Of a stretch of 64,000 nucleotides of DNA, positions 1-62,850 are shown in pieces. The notes under the pieces were generated by a model. It saw nothing but the letters and a program-made list of their open reading frames with translations, did no database searches and was not told the DNA's origin. The first letter of the stretch is position 1; every line of letters begins with the position of its first letter. This DNA comes from Octopus sinensis (lineage: Eukaryota): contig NC_043017.1 in the NCBI RefSeq assembly GCF_006345805.1, positions 2,914,001 to 2,978,000 on the forward strand. The letters run 5' to 3'. The translations under genes were made by a program, and so were the position numbers.

Positions 1-108
1 ATATATATATTTATACACATGTATATACATTTATATATATATCTTATCTGAATGTATGCATGCATATATATATATATATATATTCAGAGACATATACTAT
101 TTATATAT

Positions 109-171
<63 letters not shown>

Positions 172-224
172 AATACATATATACATATATATATTTATAC
201 AAATATATTTGTATGCGGATATCT

Positions 225-260
<36 letters not shown>

Positions 261-417
261 GTACATATGCATAAATATATATATGAGATATATATTCAAA
301 GAGACACACGCACAACATATGTATAATTACGTAGGTTTCTTCTTTCGTCGCATATACACACTTCTGCCTGCGTGTTTGTGAGTAAATGTGTTTGAGAGGA
401 AGAGTAAGCGAGCGAAT

Positions 418-467
<50 letters not shown>

Positions 468-988
468 TGGAGGAAGACAATGGGTGGGAAAGACACACAG
501 AAAAGAAGAACAGTAAAAGAGATGGAAAGATAGTTGGAAGAGAAAAAGAGAAGATGAAATGCTGCTCTCGAAAAGCCCTCCAATTTCACTTGACATTGAA
601 TCATTAATTAATTTCTGACACCTTTAGTCTTGAGAAGAGGATGAATCTTAGCATAATAATGCATTAATAGTCTTGAAAGTAATTTCCAACGCACCAATTA
701 ATTAAGAAAAATGAGTAAATGAAATTAATTTATCAGAGGAACATTTCACGGCATGTATGAGAAGGCAACATCTTCCTTGGAATATAATCGATAAATAAAT
801 ACAACGAGACGAAGAATTACTACAAAAAGCAGTAACAAAATTGAAGGAAATTAAAAACAACCTATGGTTATGTTCTTTTATAGCTTTTATTTATTCTTAT
901 TTTTATTTCTTCACACTTCTTTTACGCTTTCGTTTATAGATACATATAGACATACGTTCACACCGACGCAAGCGCACACACAAATATC

Positions 989-14423: not shown

Positions 14424-14532
14424 ATATATATATATATATAATGTGGATAAATTAAAAGATAGAGTCAAACGCAGGTGCTATACATACACATTGAAAAAAT
14501 ATACATACATTTATATATACATGCATATATAT

Positions 14533-14566
<34 letters not shown>

Positions 14567-14619
14567 GTTTGTTTGTGTGTGTGTATGTAACTGTGTTTGT
14601 GTGTGCGCGCATGTGTGCA

Positions 14620-14825
14620 TGTGTGTCCCCCCACCAACGCATGACAACCGGTGTTGGCTTGTTTACATCTTCGTAACTTAGCGGTTCGACAAAAGACACC
14701 GATAGCATAAGTACCAAGCTATAAAATCGATTTCAAAAATCTACTGCAATCAATACGTTCTATTTTGTACTTCTGCACGATAGTGCCCCAGCCTGGCCGC
14801 AGTCTAATGACTGAAACATGCAAAA
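14620..14825 (+). mobile_element. SINE family A, 3' half, diverged
   Basis: gacaaccggtgttgg...cgtaacttagcggttcgacaaaagacaccgatag...ggccgcagtctaatgactgaaac. Confidence 0.75.
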
Positions 14826-15105
14826 ACAATTAAAAAAACACACAAAATCTAACAGTCATCTGCAAATACATATGTAATAGACTGAAAATTGTAGCTGCAG
14901 TTAATCTAGCGGTGATGTTGTCATCGGCGAAAGAACCAAGATGGCGGTGTTCTTGCAGCATCTGAACGGCAAACAGAATGGTCTTCTATTCACCGAGTTT
15001 GTATTCCACTTAACAAGTATTTTACGCATGCGATTTGGTACTAATGAGTGTCGACTGATTCATATTTGCTTATCTATATTCATATACTGCTTCCACCTAT
15101 ATATG

Positions 15106-15138
<33 letters not shown>

Positions 15139-15295
15139 TGCGTGTGTGTGTATGTGTGCGTGCGTGAGTATGTGTGTGTATGTGTGTGTGTGTGTGTGTG
15201 TGATGGTCTATTAGAGAAAACTACTGAAGACATAACATTTAAATTATTCGTTAGACAATTGACTGATAAACAATATTAGAAGTATGTTAATATAC

Positions 15296-15328
<33 letters not shown>

Positions 15329-15468
15329 TGTACGTATATATATATATACATGTATATATGTATATATATCTATATATATATATATATATAAATACATACA
15401 TTATATATATATAGAGATTTATATATATATTTATAAATACATAAATTATATATAAATATATATATATA

Positions 15469-15855
15469 TATATATACCAATTAAGGACTGAACACGAAAA
15501 GTGGACAGTCAACATGCTAGATATAGACGTCAAATCGCCATTCACCACAAAAGATTATGTTCTCAGATCAAACTCAACACAAAACCATAGCAATAAACAA
15601 GTGAAAAATATACGAAATAAAATAATTACCCATGCTGATGATGGCTGCAGTTTTCCTTGCGGAAAATAACAGCTGAAACTAATTTAGTACATGGGTAATT
15701 ATTTTATTTCGTATATTTTTCACTTGTTTATTGCTATGGTTTTGTGTTGAGTTTGATCTGAGAACATAATCTTTTGTGGTGAATGGCGATTTGATGTCTA
15801 TATCTAGCATGTTGACTGTCCACTTTTCGTGTTCAGTCCTTAATTGGTATATATA
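15469..15855. repeat. Near-perfect inverted repeat with 166-bp arms, embedded in (TA)n
   Basis: 15469-15634 is the reverse complement of 15690-15855 with one difference (gacgtc vs gatgtc, a G-U pair in a + strand transcript). The outer limits are blurred by the (TA)n flanks. Confidence 0.95.
15631..15693 (+). ncRNA. Type I hammerhead ribozyme with complete core
   Basis: catg-CTGATGA(15635-41)-t-ggctg/cagct stem II with inner gttttcc(ttgc)ggaaaat hairpin-GAAAC-ta(att)ta-GTA(15687-89)-catg. Predicted cleavage is 3' of 15689. Confidence 0.85.
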
Positions 15856-15932
15856 AATATTTTAATCTTCGGATTCTTTTTTAATATGCTAGACCACTGG
15901 TCTTAATTGATAAATATCAATTTCTACCCTTA

Positions 15933-15973
<41 letters not shown>

Positions 15974-16365
15974 TATATAAATATAAATATATATATATAA
16001 TGTTAATATAGCACAAGCTATCAGAAATAATACATTTACAATAATTATACTATTCGTTTTTATATAGAAACAAAATAATTTATAATACGTATGCAAATAT
16101 GTGACAAATTGGATATGAGTATGAGAGTGTGTGTATGTGTGTGTGGGGAGGATTGTGTGTCTCGGTGTATATGTGTGAGGGCGCCTTTCTGTCGATTGAG
16201 TGTGTATTAATAAACATACAACCTAAATTGGCTGTCGTATTTATAACGCCGTAGACTGCGGTAAACGTTTCCAAAAATCATTTTGTTTGGGCGACAAAGG
16301 TTAAGAAGTATGGAACTGGATGCTGACGATATACACATACATATATAGCAGCGGACGAAATACCT

Positions 16366-44640: not shown

Positions 44641-44944
44641 TTGGAGATTTTAGGTAAAATTATACAAATGTGTCCATCTGTTTTAATTTAATTAAATTCT
44701 ATGTCTTTGTGTGGCTGAAGATTGTTCTACAGTTTAAATTGATGTAATGATGCATTATTCAATTAAATGCATAAAACGATCGTACTGCATTAGCTCTGCA
44801 TATCCTGTGTTGCTTATATATATATATATAATATATATATATTATATATATATTATATATATATAATAAGTATTAGGGAATAAGTCTTTCATTGTTTGAT
44901 TTGCCTAATAGTGGTTTTGTCTCTAATTTAATATAATATATATA

Positions 44945-45303
44945 TACTACTACTACTATGACAATCCCTCAAGGTCGAGGATGATGGTCTTCGCGCAAAT
45001 TTATTGGTGAGTCCGCAGGTGACTGATAAGACCAATTCTTGCTCGAAAAGACCGGTCACAGTGCGGACATCTAATGCCGGAAGGGAGAGTCGCACGAGGT
45101 TGTTGTTGGCGCTCCTTCCGTCGTCGTCTTTTCTCCTCCAGCTCTGCAGACCTTTTCGACTCGAAAGTCGCCGTTCCCTCATGGATGGTGGTTTTCCAGA
45201 GTGGTCTGTTTTTTGCCGTTTCCTCCCAGTTGGTGAAGTCAATGTCACACTTTTTGGGGTTCAATTTCAGTGAGTCCTTGTAGCGTTTCTTCTGGCCTCC
45301 TTT
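44945..45303 (-). mobile_element. RTE (BovB-like) LINE 3' end: ORF C-terminus, 3' UTR and (TAG)n tail
   Basis: GGQKKRYKDSLK...WEETAKNRPLWKTTIHEG...CPHCDRSFRARIGLISHLRTH* is the typical RTE C-terminus with a C2H2 finger. It is followed by a short UTR and tagtagtagtag. Confidence 0.92.
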
Positions 45304-47139: not shown

Positions 47140-47690
47140 TTGTTGTTACTGCTGTTGTTGTTTTTGTAATTGTTGTTGTTGTTGTTTTGGCTACTGCTGC
47201 TGCTGCTGCTGCTTCTGCAGTCTTGCTATCAGCTGCGTCTGCCTCTTTACTTACTGGCTTAATATGTGTTGCTTGCTCTTATTACTGATTCCTCTTCTTC
47301 TTCTTCTTCTTCTTCTTCGTCTTTTCTTCCTCCCCTCCTCCTCCTCCTCTTCTTCTTCTTCTTCTTCCTATCTTCCTTCTTCTTCTTCTTCTTCTTCTTT
47401 TCCTTCTTCTTTTTTATCTTCCTCCTCCTTTTTCTTCTTCTTCTTCTTCTTCTTCTTCTTCTTTTCTTCGTTGTTGCCGTAGTAGTAGTAGTTGTGTTGT
47501 TGTTGTTGTTGTTCTTCTTCTTCTTCTTCTTCTTCTTTTCTTCTTCTTCTTCTTCTTCTTTTCTTCGTTGTTGTCGTAGTTGATGTTGTTGTTGTTGTTG
47601 TTCTTCTTCTTCTTCTTCCTCTTCTTCTTCTTCTTCTGCTTCTTCTTCTCTTTCTTCTTCTTCTTCTTCTTCTTCCTTCTTCTGTTGGCC
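47140..47690. repeat. (CTT)n/(GTT)n/(GCT)n compound microsatellite
   Basis: Seen directly. It explains the poly-E/K/S/L ORFs. Confidence 0.95.
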
Positions 47691-49000
47691 TAAGTGCTTC
47701 CGCCGATCACATCCGACGTGCAATAAATGTGACCTGTGAGGCTAAAGCGAAATGCAAAGTCGGCTGAAAGTTTAACATCAAGCCCATTAAGGCTGCCATT
47801 ATTGGTACATGCTGCAACTAAGTGCTTAAGTTGAATCAGATGAAAATGGAGGCATGAAGGGGGGGGGGGGGTCGTTGTGGAAAGCCGGCGGGGGGAATGC
47901 GAAAACATAAGAAAAGAAAACAAAAAGACAACAAAGAAAGAAGCGATAAATAGTAAAACAAAATTAGATAATGAAAGTGAAAGCAGAATTGAACGCTCAG
48001 GGACAAAAATAAAACTGTCAAAAAAAAAAGAAGAAGAAAAAAGGAGGTGAATAAAGGGAAAATTGTCAGTATAAGAAGACAGAGCAAGGGATAAGAACGG
48101 GAGAGAGGGAGAGAGAGAGAACTTGAAGAAGAATAACGAGGGAAGAAAGAATTTGTGAGTGCGATTAGGGATTAGGTTACGGAAGAAGAGAACAAAATAT
48201 GAATAAAGTGTTAGAAAGAGAATAACAGAGATTATGTGATGGGAGAGAGAGAAGGAATCAAGGAGAGGTGGAGAGTGAATGAGACAAGCTTGGAAAGAAA
48301 AAAGAAAAGAAAAGTGAAGAATACCTATAAAAATGACAAATCTACTTTTAGCTAAAACCTTATCTAAGCCTAAATACATGAAATCTAATCTGAGCTGCAC
48401 CAATATATGGATTATTGTCAGAACTGAGTGAAATATTGTGCATGTGAAGAAAGAAATAGTCAAATATTTAAGTGGAGCGAAGTCACTTGGAAAAAATAGA
48501 CCAGTCGTTTGGAATGAAATGTCAAATATAAGTTATGGAGTGAACAACATAACAGTGTCATTGTAGCAAACAGTGCCAAAGAAAATGATTAAAATCCTTC
48601 AATGATGAAATATGTCATTGAACCGATGTGCTTTATAACTAATTGAAATGGTCTGTAGTTTCGACTTAGATTTTCTGATTTGGTAAAATACCAAACTCCA
48701 CTTCCTTCATTAGTTCTCTGTAAATGAATTGATGTGTTTTTCCGTTTATAGTTGGTTTTCGTCCATGTTGTCGGCCACTTTGGTGTAGAATCAAATTTGA
48801 TCAATTATATTAATTTCGTAAGATCTCCATAATGGCTTATATCTTCTTGAATGACTCAGAATAATTCTAGCTACTTCATCATCTCTTTTTTTTTATTCCT
48901 TTTGGTATGCTAGGATATTCATATTTATATTAATCTAAGTATTTACATATGTGTGTATGTATGCGTGCATGTATGAATCTAATTATGTGTATATATAAAT

Positions 49001-49042
<42 letters not shown>

Positions 49043-49206
49043 ATATATATATATATTATATATATTCACATACGCACATACAAGAAACACACACATACAC
49101 ATACACACAGATATAGCATATTTGTAATGAACAGAACTTACAAAGTGACTTAACGGTCGAAAGACACGGGCAGTAGCCCTTTGGAATTGTATACATATAT
49201 ATATAT

Positions 49207-49276
<70 letters not shown>

Positions 49277-49300
49277 GTATATGTATATGTATCTGTGTAT

Positions 49301-49440
<140 letters not shown>

Positions 49441-49578
49441 AGTTCAAACTTACAGAAAACAAAAGAGGAAGACAGGTGTGGGAACAGCAAAACTGAGCAG
49501 ATTTATACGCACGCACACACACGCACACACTTAACACACATTTATACATATATATGTGCACACACATAACTATGTATG

Positions 49579-49624
<46 letters not shown>

Positions 49625-49625
<1 letters not shown>

Positions 49626-50025
49626 AGGCGCAGGAGTGGCTGTGTGGTAAGTAGCTTGCTAACCAACCACATGGTTCCGGGTTCAGTCCCACTGCGTGGC
49701 ATCTTGGGCAAGTGTCTTCTGCTATAGCCCCGGGCCGACCAATGCCCTCTGAGTGGATTTGGCAGACGGAAACTGAAAGAAGCCTGTCGTATATATGTAT
49801 ATATATGTATATATGTGCATGTGTGTGTGTTTTTCCCCCTAGCATTGCTTGACAACCGATGCTGGTGTGTTTACGTCCCCGTCACTTAGCGGTTCGGCAA
49901 AAGAGACAGATAGAATAAGTACTGGGCTTACAAAGACTAAGTCCCGGGGTCGATTTGCTCGACTAAAGGCGGTGCTCCAGCATGGCCGCAGTTAAATGAC
50001 TGAAACAAGTAAAATAGTAAAAGAG
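49625..50025 (+). mobile_element. SINE family A, full length
   Basis: taggcgcaggagtggctgtgtggtaag...gactgaaacaagtaaaatagtaaaagag. Confidence 0.93.
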
Positions 50026-52882: not shown

Positions 52883-54346
52883 TACGACTTTGTTAAGTAT
52901 AATAGATTGTTAATCATTTGTAAAAGACCTGTATCACAATTTGAACACGGTTACCGATATACGATATTGCATCGTGTGTGAATTATTAAATAAAAATGAA
53001 ACTGAACGGTTCCATTACAATGTCGGCGGAATTTGAACACAGGACTTAAAGACTAACGAAATACAAATAAGTATTTTCTGCGTCCTGCTAGCGATAATTT
53101 TAGCTCGCAGAATCCAACGCATATTCTTAGAAAAACATTAGAAAAGCGGGAACACTAAAAATTGATACTTCAGACAGTGGAATTCTGGTGATGATCTCTT
53201 AACTCCTGGTCACACGACCCATTCTGGACATATTCAAAATTGTATAGATTATACTTTAGCCAGATCTGAGTAAAATAGATTATTTTTTAGAGAGAAGAGG
53301 TGTATGTCAAAGAAAGAGAGAGAAGGAAGCAAGGAAACTGGTATTTTGCTAGATGCTTTTAATTCTGAAGCTAGAAGGAACGAGAACAGGGATCATGTGG
53401 AATTTGAACACAGGGTGTTGGAACAAATAACGTCCGACATTAATATATCGAATACTACATTACCATTGCATTCATTATATTAACATCAAAAACATTAGCA
53501 TTTAATTTGCATACATAATTATTCTTATTCTTCTTATTATTATTATTAGTATTATTTCCTTTATATTTAATCTTGTTCTATTGCATGTAAATTTAGTCTT
53601 GAATCCTCAAATTCATAGATATACATGTGTGTATATGTGTATGTATATCTGTATGTATATATATATATATAAATATGTATGTATGCATGTATGTGTGTCT
53701 ATGAGCGTGAGAGTGTGTGTAAATACATATAAGCATATATATATATATAGATATGTGTGTGTGTGTGTGTGTGTGTGTTTATATGTATTTATATATATGA
53801 GTATACATATGCGTTTGTGTGTGCATATATTTATATATCATTGCATGTATGTATAACTGCGTGTATGTAGGTGTGTGTACGTAAGTCTGTGTGTGTGTTT
53901 GTGTGCCTGCTTGTATGTATATATGAGTTTGCGTAGACAGATATACAGCTAGTTACATGCATCGAAGTGCTATAATTTCCTTCAACCGCGCGGTTTATTT
54001 TCCGGCATCCAAACCTCTTACCAACCATTCCTGTCATCTTCAATCCAACGCAACGCGTCTTACATTTCCCATAAATTCACGTCTCTACACATAATAAGTG
54101 ACTTGTTTGTAACCTTTTTTTTTCCCCTTCATTCTAAATGTCAGATATCTTTCTTATTTGCGTTGCCGCCTTCATTCTCTTCATAATCCACGTATTACAA
54201 AAATATGAAAAGCGGCGAATTGGTGGAAAGTGTTGAGCAGCGGGGCGAAATGTCAAAAAGAATGTTACGTCAGCTTTAAGTTCTTCTGTAAGCTCAAATA
54301 GCTAAATTACGGGGACGTAAACACGCCAACAGCGGTTGTGTCGTGC

Positions 54347-54406
<60 letters not shown>

Positions 54407-54500
54407 TTGTTTTATTTATATTCTGAGCGCCATACTAATACAATTGTTTGTTTGTACTCCACCTGCCTTCGTCTTTTGTTTATTTTCATAAAGCTTCCCG

Positions 54501-54610
<110 letters not shown>

Positions 54611-54614
54611 TATG

Positions 54615-54805
54615 ACAGCTGAACCTTACAAGTTTTTTTTTCATTCTCTCTCTGCTTATTTCTTTTTATTCCCTTCTGCTGAAGAGCGTTGGATCGAAAT
54701 ATAAAAGACCTTTTTATTTTTCTCGAGCGTCAAACTAATACGTTTTCTTGTTGTTTGATCTTACACCTGTTTTCGTCTTTTGCTTTTCTATAAATTTCAA
54801 CTATA
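54615..54805 (+). mobile_element. Penelope-like terminal repeat (HHR-bearing family), decayed
   Basis: ctgctgaagagcgttggatcgaaatataaaagac...gagcgtcaaactaatac...aaatttcaactata. Confidence 0.6.
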
Positions 54806-55155
54806 TATATGTGTGTGTGTATGTGTATAGGTACGTATATATGTATGTAACTGTGTGTGTGTTTTGTGTTTGTGTTTGTCCCATCACCACCGCTTGAATA
54901 CCCCGTAAGTTAGTGGTTGGTCTATAGAGAACTATACAACGAAAACAAACATTCATTGTAGATATGATATTCTACTTCAATAAAATTACTCTCGTAGCAC
55001 TTACGCCAATTATTATACCCTATACCACAGTGCATTTTCATATCGGAAAGTTGTGCATGTGCACTGTATACAAATTGTCAGATAAAGAGTAAAAAAGTTG
55101 CCCTTCAAAAAACATAGATAAAAAAATTATATTTCGACTTACATCCATACTTACA

Positions 55156-55360
55156 TAGGGGAAGGCGTGGCTGTGTAGCAAGAAGTTTGCTTCCCAACCA
55201 TATGGTTCTGGTTCCAATCCCACTGCGTCGACCCTTGGGCAAGTGTCCTCTACTATAGCCTTGGGCCGACCAAAGCCGTTTGAGTGGGTTTGGTAGATGA
55301 AAATTAGAAGAAACCCGTCGTATACATCGCTCGACAACCGATTTTGATGCGTTAACGTGT
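55156..55360 (+). mobile_element. SINE family A, diverged 5' half
   Basis: ggcgtggctgtgtagcaag...cttgggcaagtgtcctctactatagcc. Confidence 0.75.
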
Positions 55361-55583
55361 CCTCTTGTATATCTCGTCCATTGTCATCGTTGGCTCTTAT
55401 AGTTAAATATATATCTAATAGTTAATGTACTTGAATCAGGATTTAATGATCCAAGCTGTGACTTACTCTGTTCTTTCCCAATATAACTGAGATCATACTT
55501 TAGCACCATTGGTAATATAAATTCTGATTGTTTACATTACATGATATAATCATATTATCTAATACTCATGAATATATACATAC

Positions 55584-55659
<76 letters not shown>

Positions 55660-55676
55660 GTATGTATCTATATGGA

Positions 55677-55995
55677 GACGCAATGGCCCAGTGGTCAGGG
55701 CAGCGGACTCGCGGTCGGAGGATTGCGGCTTCGGTTTCCCAGACCGGAGCCTTGTGTGTGTTTATTCAGCGAAAACACCTAAAAGCTCCGCGAGGCTCCG
55801 ACAGGGGGTGGTGGCGAGCCCTGTTGTGCTCTTTCGCTACAACTTGCTCTCACTCTCTCTCTCTCTCTCTCTCTCGTCCTGTTTCTTAAGTAACGCTGCG
55901 ATGGACTGGCATCCCGTCCAGCTAGGGGGAACACATACGCCACAGAGACCGGGAAACCGGGCCCATGAGCCTAGCTAGCCTTGAAAAGAGCGACG
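55677..55995 (+). mobile_element. SINE family C (V-SINE-like core)
   Basis: Collinear with the 18674 copy. Confidence 0.88.
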
Positions 55996-58035
55996 TTCAT
56001 CGTTTTATATATCTATATCTATATCTATATATATATGTATATACATATATATATGTATGTATATATATATAAATTCATATAATGTGTACTTTATATATTG
56101 AAATGTATATATTATATAAAAAAGTTATTTCTGTTGATGGTTACAAACTCGTACAAACACCACATTTACACACACTAAATACATGCATTTATAAGTATGT
56201 ATATATGCGGCATATTTATGAGTAAATTTATATTCATACATACACACACATAACCATATAAACACATACACATGCACAGAGAAAATACTAGATCATGTTA
56301 CACATTGGTGTGATTGCTAACTGAGGGAGAAGTGTGTATTGTAGGGCGGCTACGCAAACATCTGAGAAAAACAAATGAAGCTGAAAGTTAACAAGACCTG
56401 GTCTTGCAAACCGAAAAGCATTAGCAATGATTTCGCAGCAGTTGTTTTGAATTTATTGTTTTCACGTTCAATTTAGAAGTGAAAACATCATTGTCGCGCT
56501 GTTGTGTTGTTGTTTTTCCTTCTCCTGCTGTTTATTTGCTTAGAGCACTTACAGAGGCATGTCCTGTCAATTTTAATAGCTTACGTTTTACGCCTGTACA
56601 TATTTAGATAAAATATACGAGTATTAGGAAGTCCACGACATGGTTTTTTACTTACTGATCCTCCCGTTTCTCATTCCAAATATTAATTATATCCCTTTTA
56701 AAAATTATTTCATCAGAACAATATTATGTGCAATCATACATGCATATACTAATATACACATATCTATGCATATATGTGAGTATGTGTGTAGGCAAGTATG
56801 TATGTACGCATGTATGTATGAGTGTATGTATATGTCTATGCATGCGTCTAAGCATGTATTTATGTCTATATATATATATATATGTGTGTGTGCGTGTGTG
56901 TGTATGAATACATACCCATGTATATATACACACGTATATAATATGCATACTGCTCGATAGATACATAGCAACATATACATGTATATATATATACATATAT
57001 ATGTGTGTGTGCATGTGTGTGTGTATGTATGTATATATATATTTATAAAAAGAGAGAGGGATACATAAACAAATATATTATATAACTATATATATATATA
57101 TATACATATATTAATATGTATGTGTATGTGGACATATATGTATGCTTAAATATGTGCATGTGTAGATATGCGTATGCACATGTACATATATATGCACTTT
57201 GGTATATATATTTACATATGATTATATGTATATGCATATATATATATATATATATTGCACATAATATGTATATATACGCATAAGTTTATGCTTATGTACA
57301 CACACGCACGCGATTAATATATACATGCATATAACTGTCTGGTGTGTGTGCATCGTATATATATATACGCACATGCGAGTCTATATAGACATGTACAGAT
57401 ATGAATTTCTATATACACAATATTTATACGCATATACTTACATTCAAACAACCACACACCTTCACACAAACACAAACGCGAACATACACACACACTGGAA
57501 ACTTACACACACACGCAGGCACATTCACGGAGAAACATGTATGCATACACGTATACAAAGTCACACATATACACACTTATTTGCAATTTGCATCGATATA
57601 CTTATAGATTTATTGCAACTTGCTCAGATTTACATTATGAAAAAAGGAAAAAAAAAAACAGTGAATATAGGCCTCTTTTCACAAAAGTCCATTTGTTAGG
57701 CATCAATACACACCATTAAAGAAGTAGCATGTATAAATGTTACTGCCACAGACACCATTTACAACTCATCGATTACGGCTCCGACAAACAATAGATGCAA
57801 AAATTAATGCACATCGTAGACCTATTGGAAGCCTTTCAGATTGAGTTTAATTAAAGGCTACTTTGTAAGTGTGTGCGTGTGTTTATGTATGTGTGTGTGT
57901 GTTTATGTATTTGTATACGTATATTTATACGCATACACACGTACACACGCATATATATGCATATCTGTAACTAGGAATGATTGGATGCATGGAACTATGC
58001 ATGTAATTATATATATATATATATATAATATATAT

Positions 58036-58088
<53 letters not shown>

Positions 58089-58809
58089 TGAGAAAGTATT
58101 AATACACATTAATACTATATTCAAGCATATATATATATATATACATAGATACATACATATATGTATGTGTGTGTATATATGTATATATATATTAGCATAC
58201 ATACATATATATATATGTATATATATGTATATGTATGTATATATATGAATGTATGTATGTGTATATAAACACACATCTGTAAGGGAGATTTAACTTAAGT
58301 GATTTAGTAAGTTACACTATATCCTTTTTAGTCGCTGTTACTATATATGGTTACATAAACAAGATTACAAACACAAACACACATACGCATTTACATATGT
58401 GCATATATATATACATATGCATATATATACACATATATGCATAAACACAGTAGTGAGTTTTTCTGCATGAGCTTTTGTGATTGCAGGTCTACATAAAAGT
58501 TGCTATTAACTTCTGTGCATTAAAATATTATGAGAAGCTAATAGTGTGAGAAGAACTCAGGCATTCCTACACGACCGTGCTGCTACATATATATTGTATA
58601 CTCACACATAGTCACGCATATAGTCATGCAGATGCACACACACACATACATACATATCGTACAATCCTTGACATATGCAAGTACATTAACATTCCCCCCC
58701 ATTACACAATATAGAAGCTGAAATTACTAAACGGCTTCTAGATCCAAACATAGAATTATAATGTGGAAAGTTTAGTAAATGTAAGCTTCAATATAGGAAG
58801 AGAAATTAA

Positions 58810-59640
58810 GGTTGTTAGCAGGAAGAATTTTGATCGTGCTTTGATTTTACGTTCTGTGAGTCCAAATGACGCCGGGGTCAACTTTTCACTCCCTCGAGGT
58901 CGATTACATGAGCGGCAGTTGAACATAGTGTTAGATGAAACATGCTGGACTCGTGCAAAGATTTGAAGCCAAAGTTTTCGCCAAAGTGCTTTCTTTAGTT
59001 ACTGTCGTTTTTGTTCTGAGTTCAAATCCAGAATCAACTCACATTATCTCTTATAATTTGAAGTGTGATAAAAGTGGCGAGCTGGCAGAAACGTTAGCAC
59101 GCCGGGTGGTATTTCGTCTGGCGTTACGTTGTGAGTTCAATTTCCGCCGAGGTCGATTTTGCCTTTCATCCTTTCGAGGTGAGATTAAATAAGGACCAGT
59201 TACGCAATGGGGTCGATATATTCGACTTAATCCGTTTGTCTGTCCTTGTTTGTCCCCTCTGTGTTTAGCCCCTTGTGGGTAGTAAAGAAATAGGTATTTC
59301 GTTTACCACTACGTTCTGAGGTCAAATTCCGCCGAGGTCGACTTGGCTTTTTATCCTTTCGGGGTCGATTAAGTACCAGTTATGCACTAGGTTCCCGCAA
59401 ATCTCAGGCCTATAATAATTATTATTATAGGCGTCGACCTAGCAGAATCATTAGCACGCCAAGCAAAATGCTTAGCGACATTTCCTCCGTCGTTACGTCT
59501 TGAGTTCACATCCCTACCCAGGTTGACTTTGTCATTCATCCTTTCTGGGTCCATGAAATAATTACCAGTTACGTACTGGTGTTGATGTAATAGACTAACC
59601 CTTTTCACCCAAAATTTCAGGCATTGTGCTTACAGCTGAA
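58810..59640 (+). mobile_element. Cluster of family B SINE copies
   Basis: A full copy at ~59076-59292 plus fragments at ~58810-58975, 59293-59390 and 59430-59640. Confidence 0.8.
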
Positions 59641-60242
59641 AGAATTTTAAGTTCGACATGATAAAAAAAATACAAGAAATGCCCAAATACTGGAGATCAA
59701 TATGATCGATTCACCGATTTCTCTCACAATGGCTGCTCTTGTGCTTAGTTTACATTCTGCGTATTGCTTATATGTGTGTGTTTGTATGTGCATGCGTGCG
59801 AACGTGTTTTTCTTTTGGGTCATTTTCAGAGGGCACTGTCTCTGTTTTACAGTATTCTTTATTTGTTGTTAATTCATCTAGGTCACCAATTAAGCAATTA
59901 AATAATCGATTGTTAGACAAATCGTTTGATCAATATACTAATCAATCAGTTAGTGTGTCAGAGATTATTTGTTGCCATACAAGACCGAGACAACATTGTG
60001 CCTTCCTCGTTCCAGACTTGTCACGCATTATATTGACATAAAACGTGCGCATGCACACACATTCACACATACACACGCACACAAGAACAAACACACATAA
60101 CAACACGAGTACAATACAAAAATGTATGCACATCAAATACTCATTTGTATATAAGCACATGCAGTATATGTTCAAATGGACGAATGAAAGTTATAATTAT
60201 CTATAAGTAGCTAGTTATTATCAGGAACAATCCATTGGTGTA

Positions 60243-60306
<64 letters not shown>

Positions 60307-60437
60307 GGGTATTGGTATCTAGAAGTCCCAAAGAGTGGCAGATTACGCTAAGCAAATCCTATGGACAGACCGTAGTTAAACTCTTGGTTCGATAGTGGTA
60401 CGTGTGAAGAGTCTAATGTGGGTTTTGCATAAGCATG

Positions 60438-60472
<35 letters not shown>

Positions 60473-60633
60473 CACAAAATGAAAGAACAAAGTCAAGGCT
60501 TTGAGGAGTTTTCACGACTTTTATGAAGAAAAAGATATAGATTGAGTTATAGAAACACCTGTAAGACTATATATCTTTATCGTTGTAAATGTCCTGAAAA
60601 CTCCTCACACTCTTCGCTGTGTTATCTCATTTG

Positions 60634-60669
<36 letters not shown>

Positions 60670-60699
60670 TCAGCCAGTTGCACGTAAATTTTACGAACA

Positions 60700-60912
60700 A
60701 ACTATTCCGATGATCGTATTAGCCATGATAGACCGTTAGCCCCTAAACCGTTTTCTATTTTCTCTCCCTGTTTATTTCTGTGTTCCTTTCTGACGAAGAG
60801 CGTAGGCTCGAAACGTAAAAACTTTCTCACTTCCCGAGCGTTAAGGTAATACATCTGTTTGTTGTTTACACACCTGTCATCGTTATTCGTTTTTTTTTGT
60901 AAATTCTAACTA
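60700..60912 (+). mobile_element. Penelope-like terminal repeat (HHR-bearing family)
   Basis: Same family as 43990 and 54615, flanked by microsatellites. Confidence 0.65.
60787..60820 (+). ncRNA. Minimal type I hammerhead with canonical core
   Basis: ttt-CTGACGA-a-gagc(gtag)gctc-GAAAC-GTA-aaa. Stem III is reduced to the palindrome ACGT. Predicted cleavage is 3' of 60817. Confidence 0.65.
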
Positions 60913-61162
60913 CATACATACTTACATATGCATACATACATATATATATATGTGTGTGTGTGTGTGTGTTGGTTTAGAGTTAAGTGTATGTGCGTTACAC
61001 AAAATATAATATATTGAAATGTTCTATATAAATACATATAATGTGTATATGTATACCCAGACGCATACATACCTGTATCGCTCTCTCTCTCTCTCTCTTT
61101 CTTTCTTTACATATATATCTATTTCTCTTTCTCTCTCTCCCCCCTCTCTCACACAATATATA

Positions 61163-61236
61163 TGGCCAGATAACTGAAGAGGTGGCGGCACGGTTTTCGA
61201 CCCCGGCATCAGAAACTCAGAGTTTTATCATGGCTA
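61163..61236 (+). ncRNA. Type I hammerhead ribozyme, near intact
   Basis: tggcca-gataa-CTGAAGA-ggtg.cgg/ccg.catc stem II-a-GAAAC-t(cag)a-GTT-ttatc-a-tggcta. Stem I has 11 bp with one bulge. Predicted cleavage is 3' of 61224. Confidence 0.75.
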
Positions 61237-61273
61237 CCGAATAATTGCCACATATTACATGTACATATACATG

Positions 61274-61380
<107 letters not shown>

Positions 61381-61654
61381 CATACATAGACAGACAAACA
61401 GATATGGATATAGCACACATACACTCACTCACTCAAATCCACAAACACAATTGTATGTATATATATATGCGTTTATGAACGAGTATGTAGTATAATACAA
61501 TATAGATTTAAGCCAGAAATTATTATCAGTTTTTTTTATAAATCTACAACTATTACTGAATACGAAACTGAGAAGGATATTGATGGATTATATGCCAAAC
61601 AGTACGTAAACACTTACCTATGTATGTATGCATGTATGTAAGTAGTATCGTACG

Positions 61655-61704
<50 letters not shown>

Positions 61705-62264
61705 ATATATATGTATAAGAACTTACAACCCAAATTAGTGATTTAGATGGAATATGAGAACCTACCCATAATTACTTACAAAAGTATGGCAATCATCGAG
61801 AAATATGTTCATACGTGCGAATGTATATACCTAAACGTATACGCACTTGCTGTCACACACCGACATAAAAATATATATGTTTGTGTCTGTGTGTGTGCGT
61901 GTGTATGTGGGTGTGTGGATGAGCGTGTGTGTGTGTGTGTCTATGTGCGGTGTATGTATATCTGCGCGAATGTTTGTATGTATACATATATTTCAGTATA
62001 CACGCATAGACGCTTATTCATGCATACATGCATAGATGCTTAAATACATACTGTTGTAGCCACACGCTTACACATGTACATACACAGACGCGTGCACACA
62101 CGCGCGCACACACTCATACACAAACACACATACAAACACGCACACGCACATATATGTATGTATGTTTACTGGCATAGTTAAAAGCAAAAATGAACTTATG
62201 TAGAACCTTGCTTTAAAAATACACCCTACGTAAATATATATATAATATATATATATATTATATA

Positions 62265-62325
<61 letters not shown>

Positions 62326-62850
62326 TATGAATATATACGTGTGACAGCGCGTGCGAGCGTGTGTATGTGTATCTACGTGAGTGTGTGTTTATTACATTCA
62401 CTTTTTCACTTACATATATGTGTATATATATATATATACATGTACATATGTGTGTGTATATATATATATATATATACATATATATACATATATGTAAGTG
62501 TGGCTGTCTCTGTGAGTTAGTGTGTATCTCTATGTTGGTGCCTATGTAATTCTGAGTAAATTCTTAGGTAATTTTCCTTATATCAAATTAATTAGAGAAT
62601 ATTTTGGTAATGCGAAAAGATTTGAAGAGAAGTCAATAAAAAATAAAGAAAACATACATTTATATAAATAAGTAAAAATCAAATTGAATTCAACGTAACT
62701 AAATTTAATTAAGCGATTCGAAAAAATATATAAAAAATATATTATCCTTTAGTTTCTATTAATTAATGTGTTCTTATAATTCGATTATATGTCATTTACA
62801 AAGACGAATAAGAACAATCACTGCTACACAGATAAATATTCCTCACTCAC

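What the first reader, a model, noticed from the sequence alone, without database searches (positions are those of the whole stretch)
15469..15855. Complete hammerhead ribozyme at the apex of a 166-bp near-perfect inverted repeat
Seen: the whole 55-nt spacer (15635-15689) is a type I hammerhead core: CUGAUGA, a two-part stem II, GAAA, a 4-bp stem III and a GUA cleavage triplet. The two 166-bp arms start at the first base on each side of the core, so stem I is the entire inverted repeat. The arms differ at one position, which is a G-U wobble on the ribozyme strand, and both ends run into (TA)n. Established: Penelope-like elements and metazoan retrozymes carry type I HHRs, normally with short stem I; coleoid cephalopods edit dsRNA extensively with ADAR. 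Inference: this is a young foldback element, possibly made by snap-back synthesis primed at the natural short stem I. A + strand transcript would be a long dsRNA that cuts its own loop, while the - strand gives the same hairpin without catalysis. I do not know of a described family with this architecture, but cannot check.
Basis: partly seen in the sequence, partly recalled or inferred. Interest (0 to 1): 0.9.

Follow-up and report, generated by a model that had tools for sequence, protein, structure and literature searches.

The report
Hammerhead retroelement inserted as a foldback
The hammerhead ribozyme at the tip of a long hairpin is real, but it is one accidental insertion of a high-copy, ribozyme-carrying tandem-repeat retroelement whose copies nearly all land in (TA)n microsatellites as two inverted arms, the pattern already described for Penelope-like retroelements.

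Summary
Arms 15455-15634 and 15690-15869 are 97% complementary, and the 55-nt spacer reads as a full type I hammerhead. The arms have one mismatch inside the 166-bp core. No Rfam model detects the ribozyme.

It is not a new architecture. The ribozyme belongs to a 504-507-bp tandem-repeat family with 33.5% GC and a highly self-paired predicted circle, which fits a non-LTR retrozyme. The genome (2.72 Gb) holds 257 near-exact cores and at least 753 insertion termini.

In every locus where both ends could be judged, the insertion has two inverted arms. Both arms start at a UA tract of the unit and run a variable distance towards its 5' side. One arm always starts at unit position 168 and the other at 263, leaving a 95-nt one-sided tail. 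The outer ends abut TA repeats, and the head-to-head junctions differ between loci. This matches published Penelope-like element insertions. The unpaired base after CUGAUGA and the long helix II are also Penelope-type traits.

In the window the junction fell on the 5-nt CCATG of native helix I, so the arms extend helix I. That junction occurs only once in the genome. The most likely mechanism is two-ended target-primed reverse transcription. Snap-back synthesis is not excluded for this copy.

The parts
15330..15463 (.). Left flank: TA-rich microsatellite, the presumed target site. A (GT)n tract lies further left.
   Evidence: The same kind of flank is seen at most other insertions.
15464..15634 (-). 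Left arm. It is the reverse complement of unit positions 168 to 1, so the sense strand is the - strand with its 3' end at the outer TA tract. This is the short arm without a tail.
   Evidence: blastn against the unit: 97.7% over 171 nt.
15630..15634 (+). CCATG, the head-to-head junction. These 5 nt of microhomology belong both to the reverse complement of unit 1-5 and to native unit 445-449, the 5' strand of native helix I.
   Evidence: Overlapping HSPs. Native context ACGGACCATG|CTGATGA. The junction is unique in the genome.
15635..15689 (+). Hammerhead core (unit 450-504): CUGAUGA 15635-15641; unpaired U 15642; helix II 15643-15674 with loop UUGC 15657-15660; G12A13A14 15675-15677; helix III 15678-15688; A17 15689. 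The predicted cleavage is between 15689 and 15690.
   Evidence: Direct reading. Fold energies. Descriptor scan. The genome holds 257 copies with at most 2 mismatches. Compensatory changes occur in subfamily B.
15690..15860 (+). Right arm, paired part (unit 1-168). It carries the single arm difference at 15795 (T; the master has C).
15861..15955 (+). One-sided tail (unit 169-263). It is present only on this arm and ends in the unit's second UA tract.
   Evidence: unit 1-263 aligns to 15690-15955. The same one-sided extension appears in all judged loci. It is analogous to the tail described for Penelope-like elements.
15956..16005 (.). Right flank: (TA)n microsatellite.

Best explanation
Window ~15464-15955 is a young, 5'-truncated insertion of a hammerhead-bearing tandem-repeat retroelement. 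The unit is 504-507 bp and resembles a non-LTR retrozyme with a Penelope-type hammerhead.

The family inserts at TA repeats as two inverted arms. Each arm is an antisense copy of the sense RNA. Each starts at one of two similar 3' modules, CCUUAAUU-N-(UA)n, ending at unit 168 and unit 263. Each runs a variable distance, from 0.1 to more than 5 units, towards the 5' side.

Inferred mechanism: both 3' ends of a break in (TA)n anneal to the two UA tracts of the template RNA, which may be multimeric or circular. A Penelope-like reverse transcriptase/endonuclease extends both ends. The two cDNA ends are then joined head to head by 0-5 nt of microhomology or a short filler. This is a twin-priming-like process.

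In the window the joint used CCATG, the 5' strand of native helix I. As a result the 55-nt core became the hairpin loop and the arms became a 166-bp helix I. This is an accident of one junction, not a design.

If the + strand is transcribed, the ribozyme could cut after 15689. However, this copy has lost the native 12-nt helix I bulge and the unit segment 264-444. It is most likely a dead-on-arrival copy.

Shown: the anatomy, the family, the copy numbers, the end rule and the junction diversity. Inferred: the RNA template, the enzyme, the priming order and any cleavage.
For: Family and copy numbers:
- Native tandem arrays of period about 506 bp have a short helix I: CCATG/CATGG, a 12-nt bulge and AATTAC/GTAATT.
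- The genome holds 257 cores with at most 2 mismatches.
- There are 753 exact matches to (TA)6 plus the 168 terminus and 281 to the 263 terminus plus (TA)5, with 0 in the reversed controls.

Architecture:
- All arms read inward in descending unit coordinates.
- The ends are one 168 and one 263 in 11/11 loci found with the window query, in 4/4 array loci, and in 3 of 4 loci picked from unpaired 168 termini (the fourth was unclear).
- No same-type end pair was seen among the listed termini on the two largest contigs.
- Junctions differ between independent loci, with 0-5 nt overlap or short fillers.
- Only one orientation combination occurs, which argues for a single-stranded sense template.

Match to published Penelope-like element features:
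- Inverted 5'-truncated copy, partial tandems, one-sided tail and (TA)n targets (PMC8557442).
- Unpaired base at the 5' end of a long helix II, short helix I, and paired hammerheads on opposite strands (PMC4209133).

Supporting context in this genome:
- It has intact RVT_1 + GIY-YIG open frames of 780-883 aa, and two of these elements end at (TA)n.
- An unrelated hammerhead family shows the same foldback, TA flanks and one-sided tail.
- The unit is 33.5% GC, and its predicted circle is strongly self-paired (z = -4.5), as reported for retrozymes (PMC7229834).
Against: - No autonomous partner sharing sequence with the unit was found in the 20 Penelope-like loci I could read.
- The tail is 95 nt, against 30-40 bp in the literature.
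- No Rfam model recognises the ribozyme.
- No RNA data, no empty site and no target-site duplication could be obtained, because the flanks are TA repeats.
- Covariation rests on few diverged copies and was read by hand.
- Sixteen of the loci were chosen as 168/263 pairs, so they do not test the end rule.
- One locus (L012) has a single arm only.
- Twin priming does not by itself explain why the two ends never use the same tract. I have to assume both ends pair with one RNA at the same time.
Confidence: 0.7

Rival explanations
1. Intramolecular snap-back. A single cDNA primed at unit 263 was copied through the core. Its 3' end (CATGG) folded back onto its own CCATG and was extended along itself to the TA tract at 168.
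For: The window copy is geometrically compatible. The 263 arm (323 nt) is longer than the 168 arm, and the junction is the 5-nt self-complementary helix I. The arms were probably identical at birth, since the single difference is a CpG transition. Other junctions sit on helix I distal (L002) or in helix II (L006, L007, L010).
Against: It does not explain why the copied-back strand always stops at the other type of TA tract and never runs to the end of its template. In many loci the arm with the 168 end is far longer than the 263 arm, and in others the reverse holds (L024, L040, L042 versus L030, L032). Two different snap-back variants would therefore be needed. In the loci picked by their termini, most junctions are not at hairpin-forming sites.
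Confidence: 0.2
2. A DNA-level origin. Either it is a Foldback/MITE-type cut-and-paste transposon with fixed left and right ends and internal deletions, or a palindrome formed by replication template switching after an ordinary insertion.
For: The two termini are constant and distinct, and share the motif AATTAAGG in inverted orientation. The flanks are TA-rich, as for elements that target TA. The arms are long and inverted and are built of tandem repeats, as in Drosophila FB elements (the FB comparison is from memory).
Against: Junctions differ between independent insertions, whereas deletion derivatives of DNA transposons usually amplify as homogeneous subfamilies. Arms always keep the 3' end and lose variable 5' parts, which is the pattern of reverse transcription. 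Only the sense strand is ever copied outward-in. Arms contain more-than-unit tandems. The unit carries a conserved ribozyme with compensatory changes. No transposase was seen. A post-insertion palindrome would not give the same end rule at hundreds of sites.
Confidence: 0.05
3. An assembly or chimeric-read artefact.
For: Near-perfect palindromes are a known artefact class. The window copy has only one arm difference.
Against: The same architecture appears at every locus examined on many contigs, with different junctions. Older copies have diverged arms, with 79-92% identity to the query. The window copy obeys the family's 168/263 rule, carries the tail, and has an arm mismatch.
Confidence: 0.02
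4. A selected host gene for a self-cleaving long hairpin RNA, for example a source of dsRNA for RNAi or ADAR.
For: A + strand transcript would form about 166 bp of dsRNA with a ribozyme loop.
Against: The junction is unique. The copy is young. There is no sign of conservation or of its own promoter. The native tertiary-contact bulge is lost. Sibling insertions have arbitrary junctions.
Confidence: 0.03

Closest known systems
Non-LTR retrozymes of metazoans (Cervera and de la Pena 2020, PMC7229834)
   Same: [quoted passage not shown] The monomer is predicted to be highly self-paired. The element is non-coding.
   Different: The unit is 504-507 bp, above the 150-450 bp range quoted. The hammerhead has the Penelope-type unpaired base and a long two-part helix II. 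That paper does not mention inverted arms, defined TA-tract ends or microsatellite targets, all of which are the rule here. circRNA expression was not tested.
Penelope-like element insertion architecture (Craig et al. 2021, PMC8557442; Arkhipova 2006 as cited there)
   Same: 5' truncation, partial tandems, an adjacent inverted 5'-truncated copy forming inverted repeats, an extension (tail) at only one end, and a preference for (TA)n microsatellites. Cephalopods, including Octopus spp., are reported there to carry such elements.
   Different: The element here has no ORF. The tail is 95 nt rather than 30-40 bp. In my sample the one-sided tail is strict rather than 'often'. No autonomous relative sharing sequence was found.
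Penelope-type hammerheads (Cervera and de la Pena 2014, PMC4209133)
   Same: [quoted passage not shown]
   Different: Helix III here is 4 bp with a 3-nt loop. It is not the minimal or palindromic helix III of min-HHRs, so cleavage as a monomer is plausible (inference).
Twin priming inversions of human L1 (Ostertag and Kazazian 2001; from memory, not read here)
   Same: Both ends of the target prime reverse transcription on the element RNA. The result is an inverted 5' part joined to a direct 3' part by microhomology.
   Different: In L1 the two arms copy different parts of one linear RNA. Here both arms copy the same region, often more than one unit, and start at two fixed internal tracts.
Drosophila Foldback (FB) elements (from memory)
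   Same: Long inverted arms made of tandem repeats, of variable length.
   Different: FB elements are DNA transposons. Here the 5'-truncation pattern, the strand rule and the ribozyme point to an RNA intermediate.

Membership tests
Hammerhead ribozyme, type I | Conserved core: C3U4G5A6N7G8A9, G12A13A14, A15.1-U16.1 pair, H17 not G | tested here: met
   Read directly at 15635-15689. There is one extra unpaired U between A9 and helix II. This is a variant reported as usual for Penelope-like element hammerheads.
Hammerhead ribozyme, type I | Three helices around the core, with helix I open | tested here: met
   The constrained fold equals or nearly equals the minimum free energy structure in the foldback and native contexts. 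The descriptor scan gave 0 hits in 60 shuffles.
Hammerhead ribozyme, type I | Match to the curated Rfam model RF00163 (or another hammerhead model) | tested here: not met
   No hit at gathering score or at E<=10. RF00163 does find 8 other sites over its cut-off in this genome.
Hammerhead ribozyme, type I | Helices supported by compensatory changes | tested here: inconclusive
   Read by hand. The fourth pair of helix III is A-U in subfamily A, G.U in L005, and G-C in L009, L006 and L010. One helix II pair is G-C in subfamily A and A-U in L009. Too few diverged copies were available for a formal count, and MAFFT misaligned helix II.
Hammerhead ribozyme, type I | Self-cleavage 3' of H17 | not testable with these tools
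   This needs in vitro transcription or sequencing of RNA ends.
Non-LTR retrozyme | Type I hammerhead in every unit of a head-to-tail tandem repeat, low GC, no ORF | tested here: met
   Arrays of period about 506 bp, with 12 exact core matches in the 10-kb locus L023. GC is 33.5%. The unit is slightly longer than the published size range.
Non-LTR retrozyme | Expressed as self-cleaved linear and circular RNA | not testable with these tools
   No RNA data were available. Only the predicted self-pairing of the circle could be computed (z = -4.5).
Penelope-like element-type insertion (non-autonomous) | Adjacent inverted 5'-truncated copy, with or without partial tandems | tested here: met
   Seen in 34 loci with both ends visible. 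One locus (L012) has a single arm.
Penelope-like element-type insertion (non-autonomous) | Extension (tail) at only one end | tested here: met
   Unit 169-263 is present on exactly one arm in all loci that could be judged, including 18 not selected for it. The length is 95 nt against the published 30-40 bp.
Penelope-like element-type insertion (non-autonomous) | Microsatellite, (TA)n, target | tested here: met
   The flanks of the loci examined begin with TA repeats on at least one side, and usually on both. Pre-insertion sites were not seen.
Penelope-like element-type insertion (non-autonomous) | Sequence shared with an autonomous RT + GIY-YIG element of the same genome | tested here: inconclusive
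   blastn found no similarity to 20 loci with GIY-YIG hits. Intact Penelope-like ORFs exist, and two of these elements end at (TA)n.
Foldback/MITE DNA transposon | Homogeneous copies with fixed termini, a target-site duplication, and a transposase-encoding relative | tested here: not met
   The termini are fixed, but inner junctions differ between independent insertions. No target-site duplication can be discerned in TA repeats. No transposase was found, though the search for one was not exhaustive.

The most novel reading that the evidence does not exclude
This family may be a natural record of how Penelope-like reverse transcription integrates. The unit carries two near-duplicate 3' modules, CCUUAAUU-N-(UA)n, 95 nt apart. 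Every insertion uses one module for each side of the (TA)n break. If so, the one-sided tail and the inverted partner of Penelope-like elements would be explained by obligatory two-ended priming on one RNA. It would also give direct structural evidence that invertebrate retrozymes are mobilised by Penelope-like elements. A less likely novel reading is that the window locus itself is used as a self-cleaving long-hairpin RNA.
Probability: 0.35. Interest if true: 0.55.

Novelty: new member of a known kind. Interest (0 to 1): 0.38.

Why it matters
The finding itself is not an unknown ribozyme architecture. It is a chance product of a known style of retroelement insertion.

The family behind it is more useful than the single locus. 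It provides hundreds of young insertions with exactly defined outer ends, a strict one-sided tail, and inner junctions that differ from locus to locus. These could be mined to work out the still undefined integration mechanism of Penelope-like elements. They could also test, from insertion anatomy rather than phylogeny, the recent proposal that animal retrozymes are non-autonomous Penelope derivatives.

The case also shows that Rfam's hammerhead models miss this Penelope-type variant, which has an unpaired base after A9 and a long two-part helix II.

Tried and rejected
- Rfam scans of the window, the locus and a native copy found no hammerhead. RF00163 run on the genome finds only other families.
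- Tandem Repeats Finder missed the array because its period limit is 500.
- I looked for ORFs near RF00163 hits to find a Penelope protein. Only LINE-like fragments turned up.
- Pfam scans of 20 long ORFs in the window gave nothing useful. The gene context therefore remains unknown.
- blastn of the unit against 20 GIY-YIG loci found no autonomous partner.
I did not try to get those letters by another route.
- The MAFFT alignment of hammerhead variants misaligned helix II of the one subfamily B copy. No formal covariation count was made.
- A repeat scan of window 53.5-62.5 kb for pseudo-LTRs around the min-HHR-like motifs was swamped by microsatellites.
- One literature search was too broad and returned nothing relevant.
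- Considered and rejected: later loss of one tail by slippage between TA tracts. This would also produce 168/168 and 263/263 copies, and none were seen.
- The organism was not verified.

Full report
**1. Observation**

The sequence at 15300-16050 and the repeat finder confirm an inverted repeat. Its arms are 15455-15634 and 15690-15869 (180 nt, 97% complementary), with a 55-nt spacer. Inside the 166-bp core the arms differ at one position: 15529 G versus 15795 T. This gives a G.U wobble in the + strand RNA. It is a CpG-to-TpG change in the right arm, because 159 of 161 family copies carry C there. Both ends run into TA-rich microsatellite.

The spacer reads CUGAUGA-U-GGCUG-CA-GUUUUCC-UUGC-GGAAAAU-AA-CAGCU-GAA-ACUA-AUU-UAGU-A. 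That is a complete type I hammerhead core with a two-part helix II, a 4-bp helix III and a GUA triplet. The predicted cut lies between 15689 and 15690.

The hammerhead fold is as good as the minimum free energy structure. A simple descriptor finds it in the real window and never in 60 shuffled windows. No Rfam model detects it, even at E<=10.

**2. What it belongs to**

A search of the window's own genome (2.72 Gb, 13,516 contigs) with the foldback returned two kinds of match. One kind was at least 10 other full-length foldbacks at 79-96% identity. The other was many copies, reported at 99-100% identity, that cover only the core plus the right arm, spaced about 506 or 1011 bp apart.

Reading such an array defines a unit of 504-507 bp. 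In it the ribozyme has a short native helix I: CCATG/CATGG, a 12-nt bulge, then AATTAC/GTAATT. The unit is 33.5% GC, and its predicted circular form is strongly self-paired (z = -4.5).

Genome-wide there are 257 cores with at most 2 mismatches. There are 753 exact matches to (TA)6 plus the 168 terminus, and 281 to the 263 terminus plus (TA)5. The reversed-pattern controls gave none. A diverged subfamily B has at least 40 native copies.

**3. Architecture of the insertions**

I mapped the unit onto 38 loci. With one single-arm exception (L012) and one unclear case (L048), every locus whose ends could be seen is a head-to-head pair of arms.

- Read from the outside in, both arms run in descending unit coordinates. 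The sense strand of each arm therefore has its 3' end at the outer edge.
- One outer end is always at unit ~168 (CCTTAATTGG-TATATATA). The other is at unit ~263 (CCTTAATTAATTT-TATATA). One arm therefore carries 95 extra nt.
- Both ends abut TA repeats.
- Arms range from about 60 nt to more than 5 tandem units.
- The inner junction differs between independent loci. It has 0-5 nt of overlap, or a short filler that is duplicated or TA-rich.

Sixteen of these loci (L030-L045) were picked as 168/263 pairs and so do not test the rule. The remaining loci do test it:

- 11/11 loci found with the window query obey it.
- 4/4 array loci obey it.
- 3 of 4 loci chosen from unpaired 168 termini obey it; the fourth was unclear.

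No 168/168 or 263/263 pair occurs among the listed termini of the two largest contigs. Many insertions are too short to contain the ribozyme, for example L031 and L033. In L006, L007 and L010 the junction lies inside helix II and destroys it.

**4. The window copy in this light**

The window element is rc(168..1) + 445..504 + 1..263, spanning about 15464-15955. Its junction is the 5-nt CCATG, which is shared by the reverse complement of unit 1-5 and by native unit 445-449. The junction therefore fell exactly on the 5' strand of native helix I. That is why the arms begin flush with the core.

The junction sequence AATTACCCATG|CTGATGATGG occurs once in the genome, allowing one mismatch. The nearest analogue, L009 in subfamily B, has its junction about 5 nt further upstream and is also unique. 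The ribozyme-at-the-apex layout is therefore a one-off outcome of a general process.

This copy lacks unit 264-444 and the helix I bulge. In type I hammerheads that bulge usually makes the tertiary contact with helix II. I therefore expect weaker cleavage at physiological magnesium (inference).

**5. Mechanism**

Only one of the four possible orientation combinations is seen: both ends copy the sense strand inward. This argues for a single-stranded sense template, meaning RNA. Variable 5' truncation with constant 3' ends is the signature of target-primed reverse transcription. More-than-unit arms fit a multimeric or circular template.

I therefore favour two-ended priming. The two 3' ends of a break in (TA)n pair with the two UA tracts of the template and are both extended. 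The two cDNA ends are then joined by microhomology. The strict pairing of one 168 end with one 263 end suggests that both ends engage the same RNA at its two adjacent, similar modules. This last step is inference.

It does not explain the end rule, nor loci where either arm can be much the longer.

A cut-and-paste Foldback or MITE element is unlikely. Junctions differ between insertions, and the truncation pattern is retro-like.

An assembly artefact is excluded at the family level, because the architecture recurs at every locus examined, including old copies with diverged arms.

**6. Comparison with the literature**

Craig et al. 2021 (PMC8557442) describe Penelope-like insertions as follows:

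- They are 5'-truncated.
- They are often in partial tandems.
- They often have an inverted 5'-truncated copy alongside, forming inverted repeats.
- They have a 30-40-bp tail, often at only one end.
- (TA)n is a preferred target for the Naiad clade.
- Octopus spp. are listed among the hosts.

[quoted passage not shown] They also noted pairs of motifs on opposite strands 100-700 bp apart. All of these features are met here. They also explain why RF00163 misses the motif.

The retrozyme paper (PMC7229834) describes tandem repeats with type I hammerheads expressed as circular RNAs. It does not mention inverted arms, targets or defined ends. Neither does a 2026 preprint proposing that vertebrate retrozymes derive from Penelope-like elements.

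This genome holds many GIY-YIG hits with intact frames of 780-883 aa. One of them (L070) has RVT_1 plus GIY-YIG. Its 3' end, and that of L079, abuts (TA)n. I found no sequence similarity between the unit and the 20 Penelope-like loci I could read, so the autonomous partner is not identified.

A second, unrelated hammerhead family in L071 shows the same anatomy: 204-nt arms at 99% complementarity, a 19-nt spacer, TA repeats on both sides, and a one-sided tail of about 75 nt.

**7. Evidence that the ribozyme is maintained**

- Between subfamilies the core is invariant.
- The fourth pair of helix III is A-U in subfamily A, G.U in L005, and G-C in L009, L006 and L010.
- One helix II pair changes from G-C to A-U.
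- The unpaired base is U in subfamily A, and A in subfamily B and in the L071 family.

This is suggestive. It rests on few sequences and on manual alignment.

**8. Verdict**

The feature is a real, young, probably inert insertion of a high-copy hammerhead retroelement. It is best filed as a new member of the retrozyme / non-autonomous Penelope-like kind.

The single locus is of low interest. The family's strict insertion anatomy is of moderate interest for working out how Penelope-like elements integrate.

Noticed in passing
L071:747-1250 (G000:C6, next to a GIY-YIG hit): A second, unrelated hammerhead-bearing family forms the same kind of foldback. Its 204-nt arms are 99% complementary with a 19-nt spacer. 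It has (TA)n on both sides and a tail of about 75 nt on one arm only. Its hammerhead, CUGAUGA-A-UGACUGC...GCAGGCA-C-GAAAC-GAUCGU-A, has the unpaired A and a palindromic helix III.
   Followed up: partly
window 44814-44952: A fragment 81% identical to the arm of that second family (L071 type).
   Followed up: no
window 60780-60830 (+), with a diverged copy near 54679 (+): The motif CTGACGA-A-GAGC-GTAG-GCTC-GAAAC-GTA looks like a Penelope-type minimal hammerhead, with an unpaired A, a 4-bp helix II and a palindromic ACGU in place of helix III. It was found by regular expression only. Rfam did not report it, and nearby ORFs gave no Pfam match.
   Followed up: partly
window 61174-61224 (+): A weak second hit of my hammerhead descriptor, with a CTGAAGA core and a 5-bp helix I. 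The helices are poor, and it may be chance.
   Followed up: no
L026:1142-2480 (G000:C5:52670141-52671479): A whole foldback insertion, rc(172..1, 504..326) + 461..504 + 1..263, is present twice in tandem with a spacing of 676-677 bp. The complete inverted unit was therefore duplicated after, or during, insertion.
   Followed up: no
L039:155-531: An insertion with three orientation switches: rc 168..90, then 67..98, then rc 159..89, then 65..263. This suggests repeated template switching within one event.
   Followed up: no
G000 places listed, e.g. C18:49304140(-)/49304234(+), C13:23787518(-)/23788041(+), C16:25146363/25146794: Canonical RF00163 hammerheads of other families also occur as close inverted pairs or as short tandems in this genome.
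   Followed up: no
G000 places listed; L070:1-1791: Many GIY-YIG hits have identical scores and intact frames of about 781 aa. This points to a very recently active Penelope-like family. L070 has RVT_1 plus GIY-YIG, and its 3' end meets (TA)n.
   Followed up: partly
window 47259-49870 (-): Three consecutive long stop-free frames (160, 280 and 295 aa) with no Pfam match. They may be a decayed mobile element or exons.
   Followed up: partly
whole window, e.g. 14500-16200 and 53500-62500: The density of (TA)n and (GT)n microsatellites is extremely high. Such tracts are the apparent landing sites of these elements.
   Followed up: no
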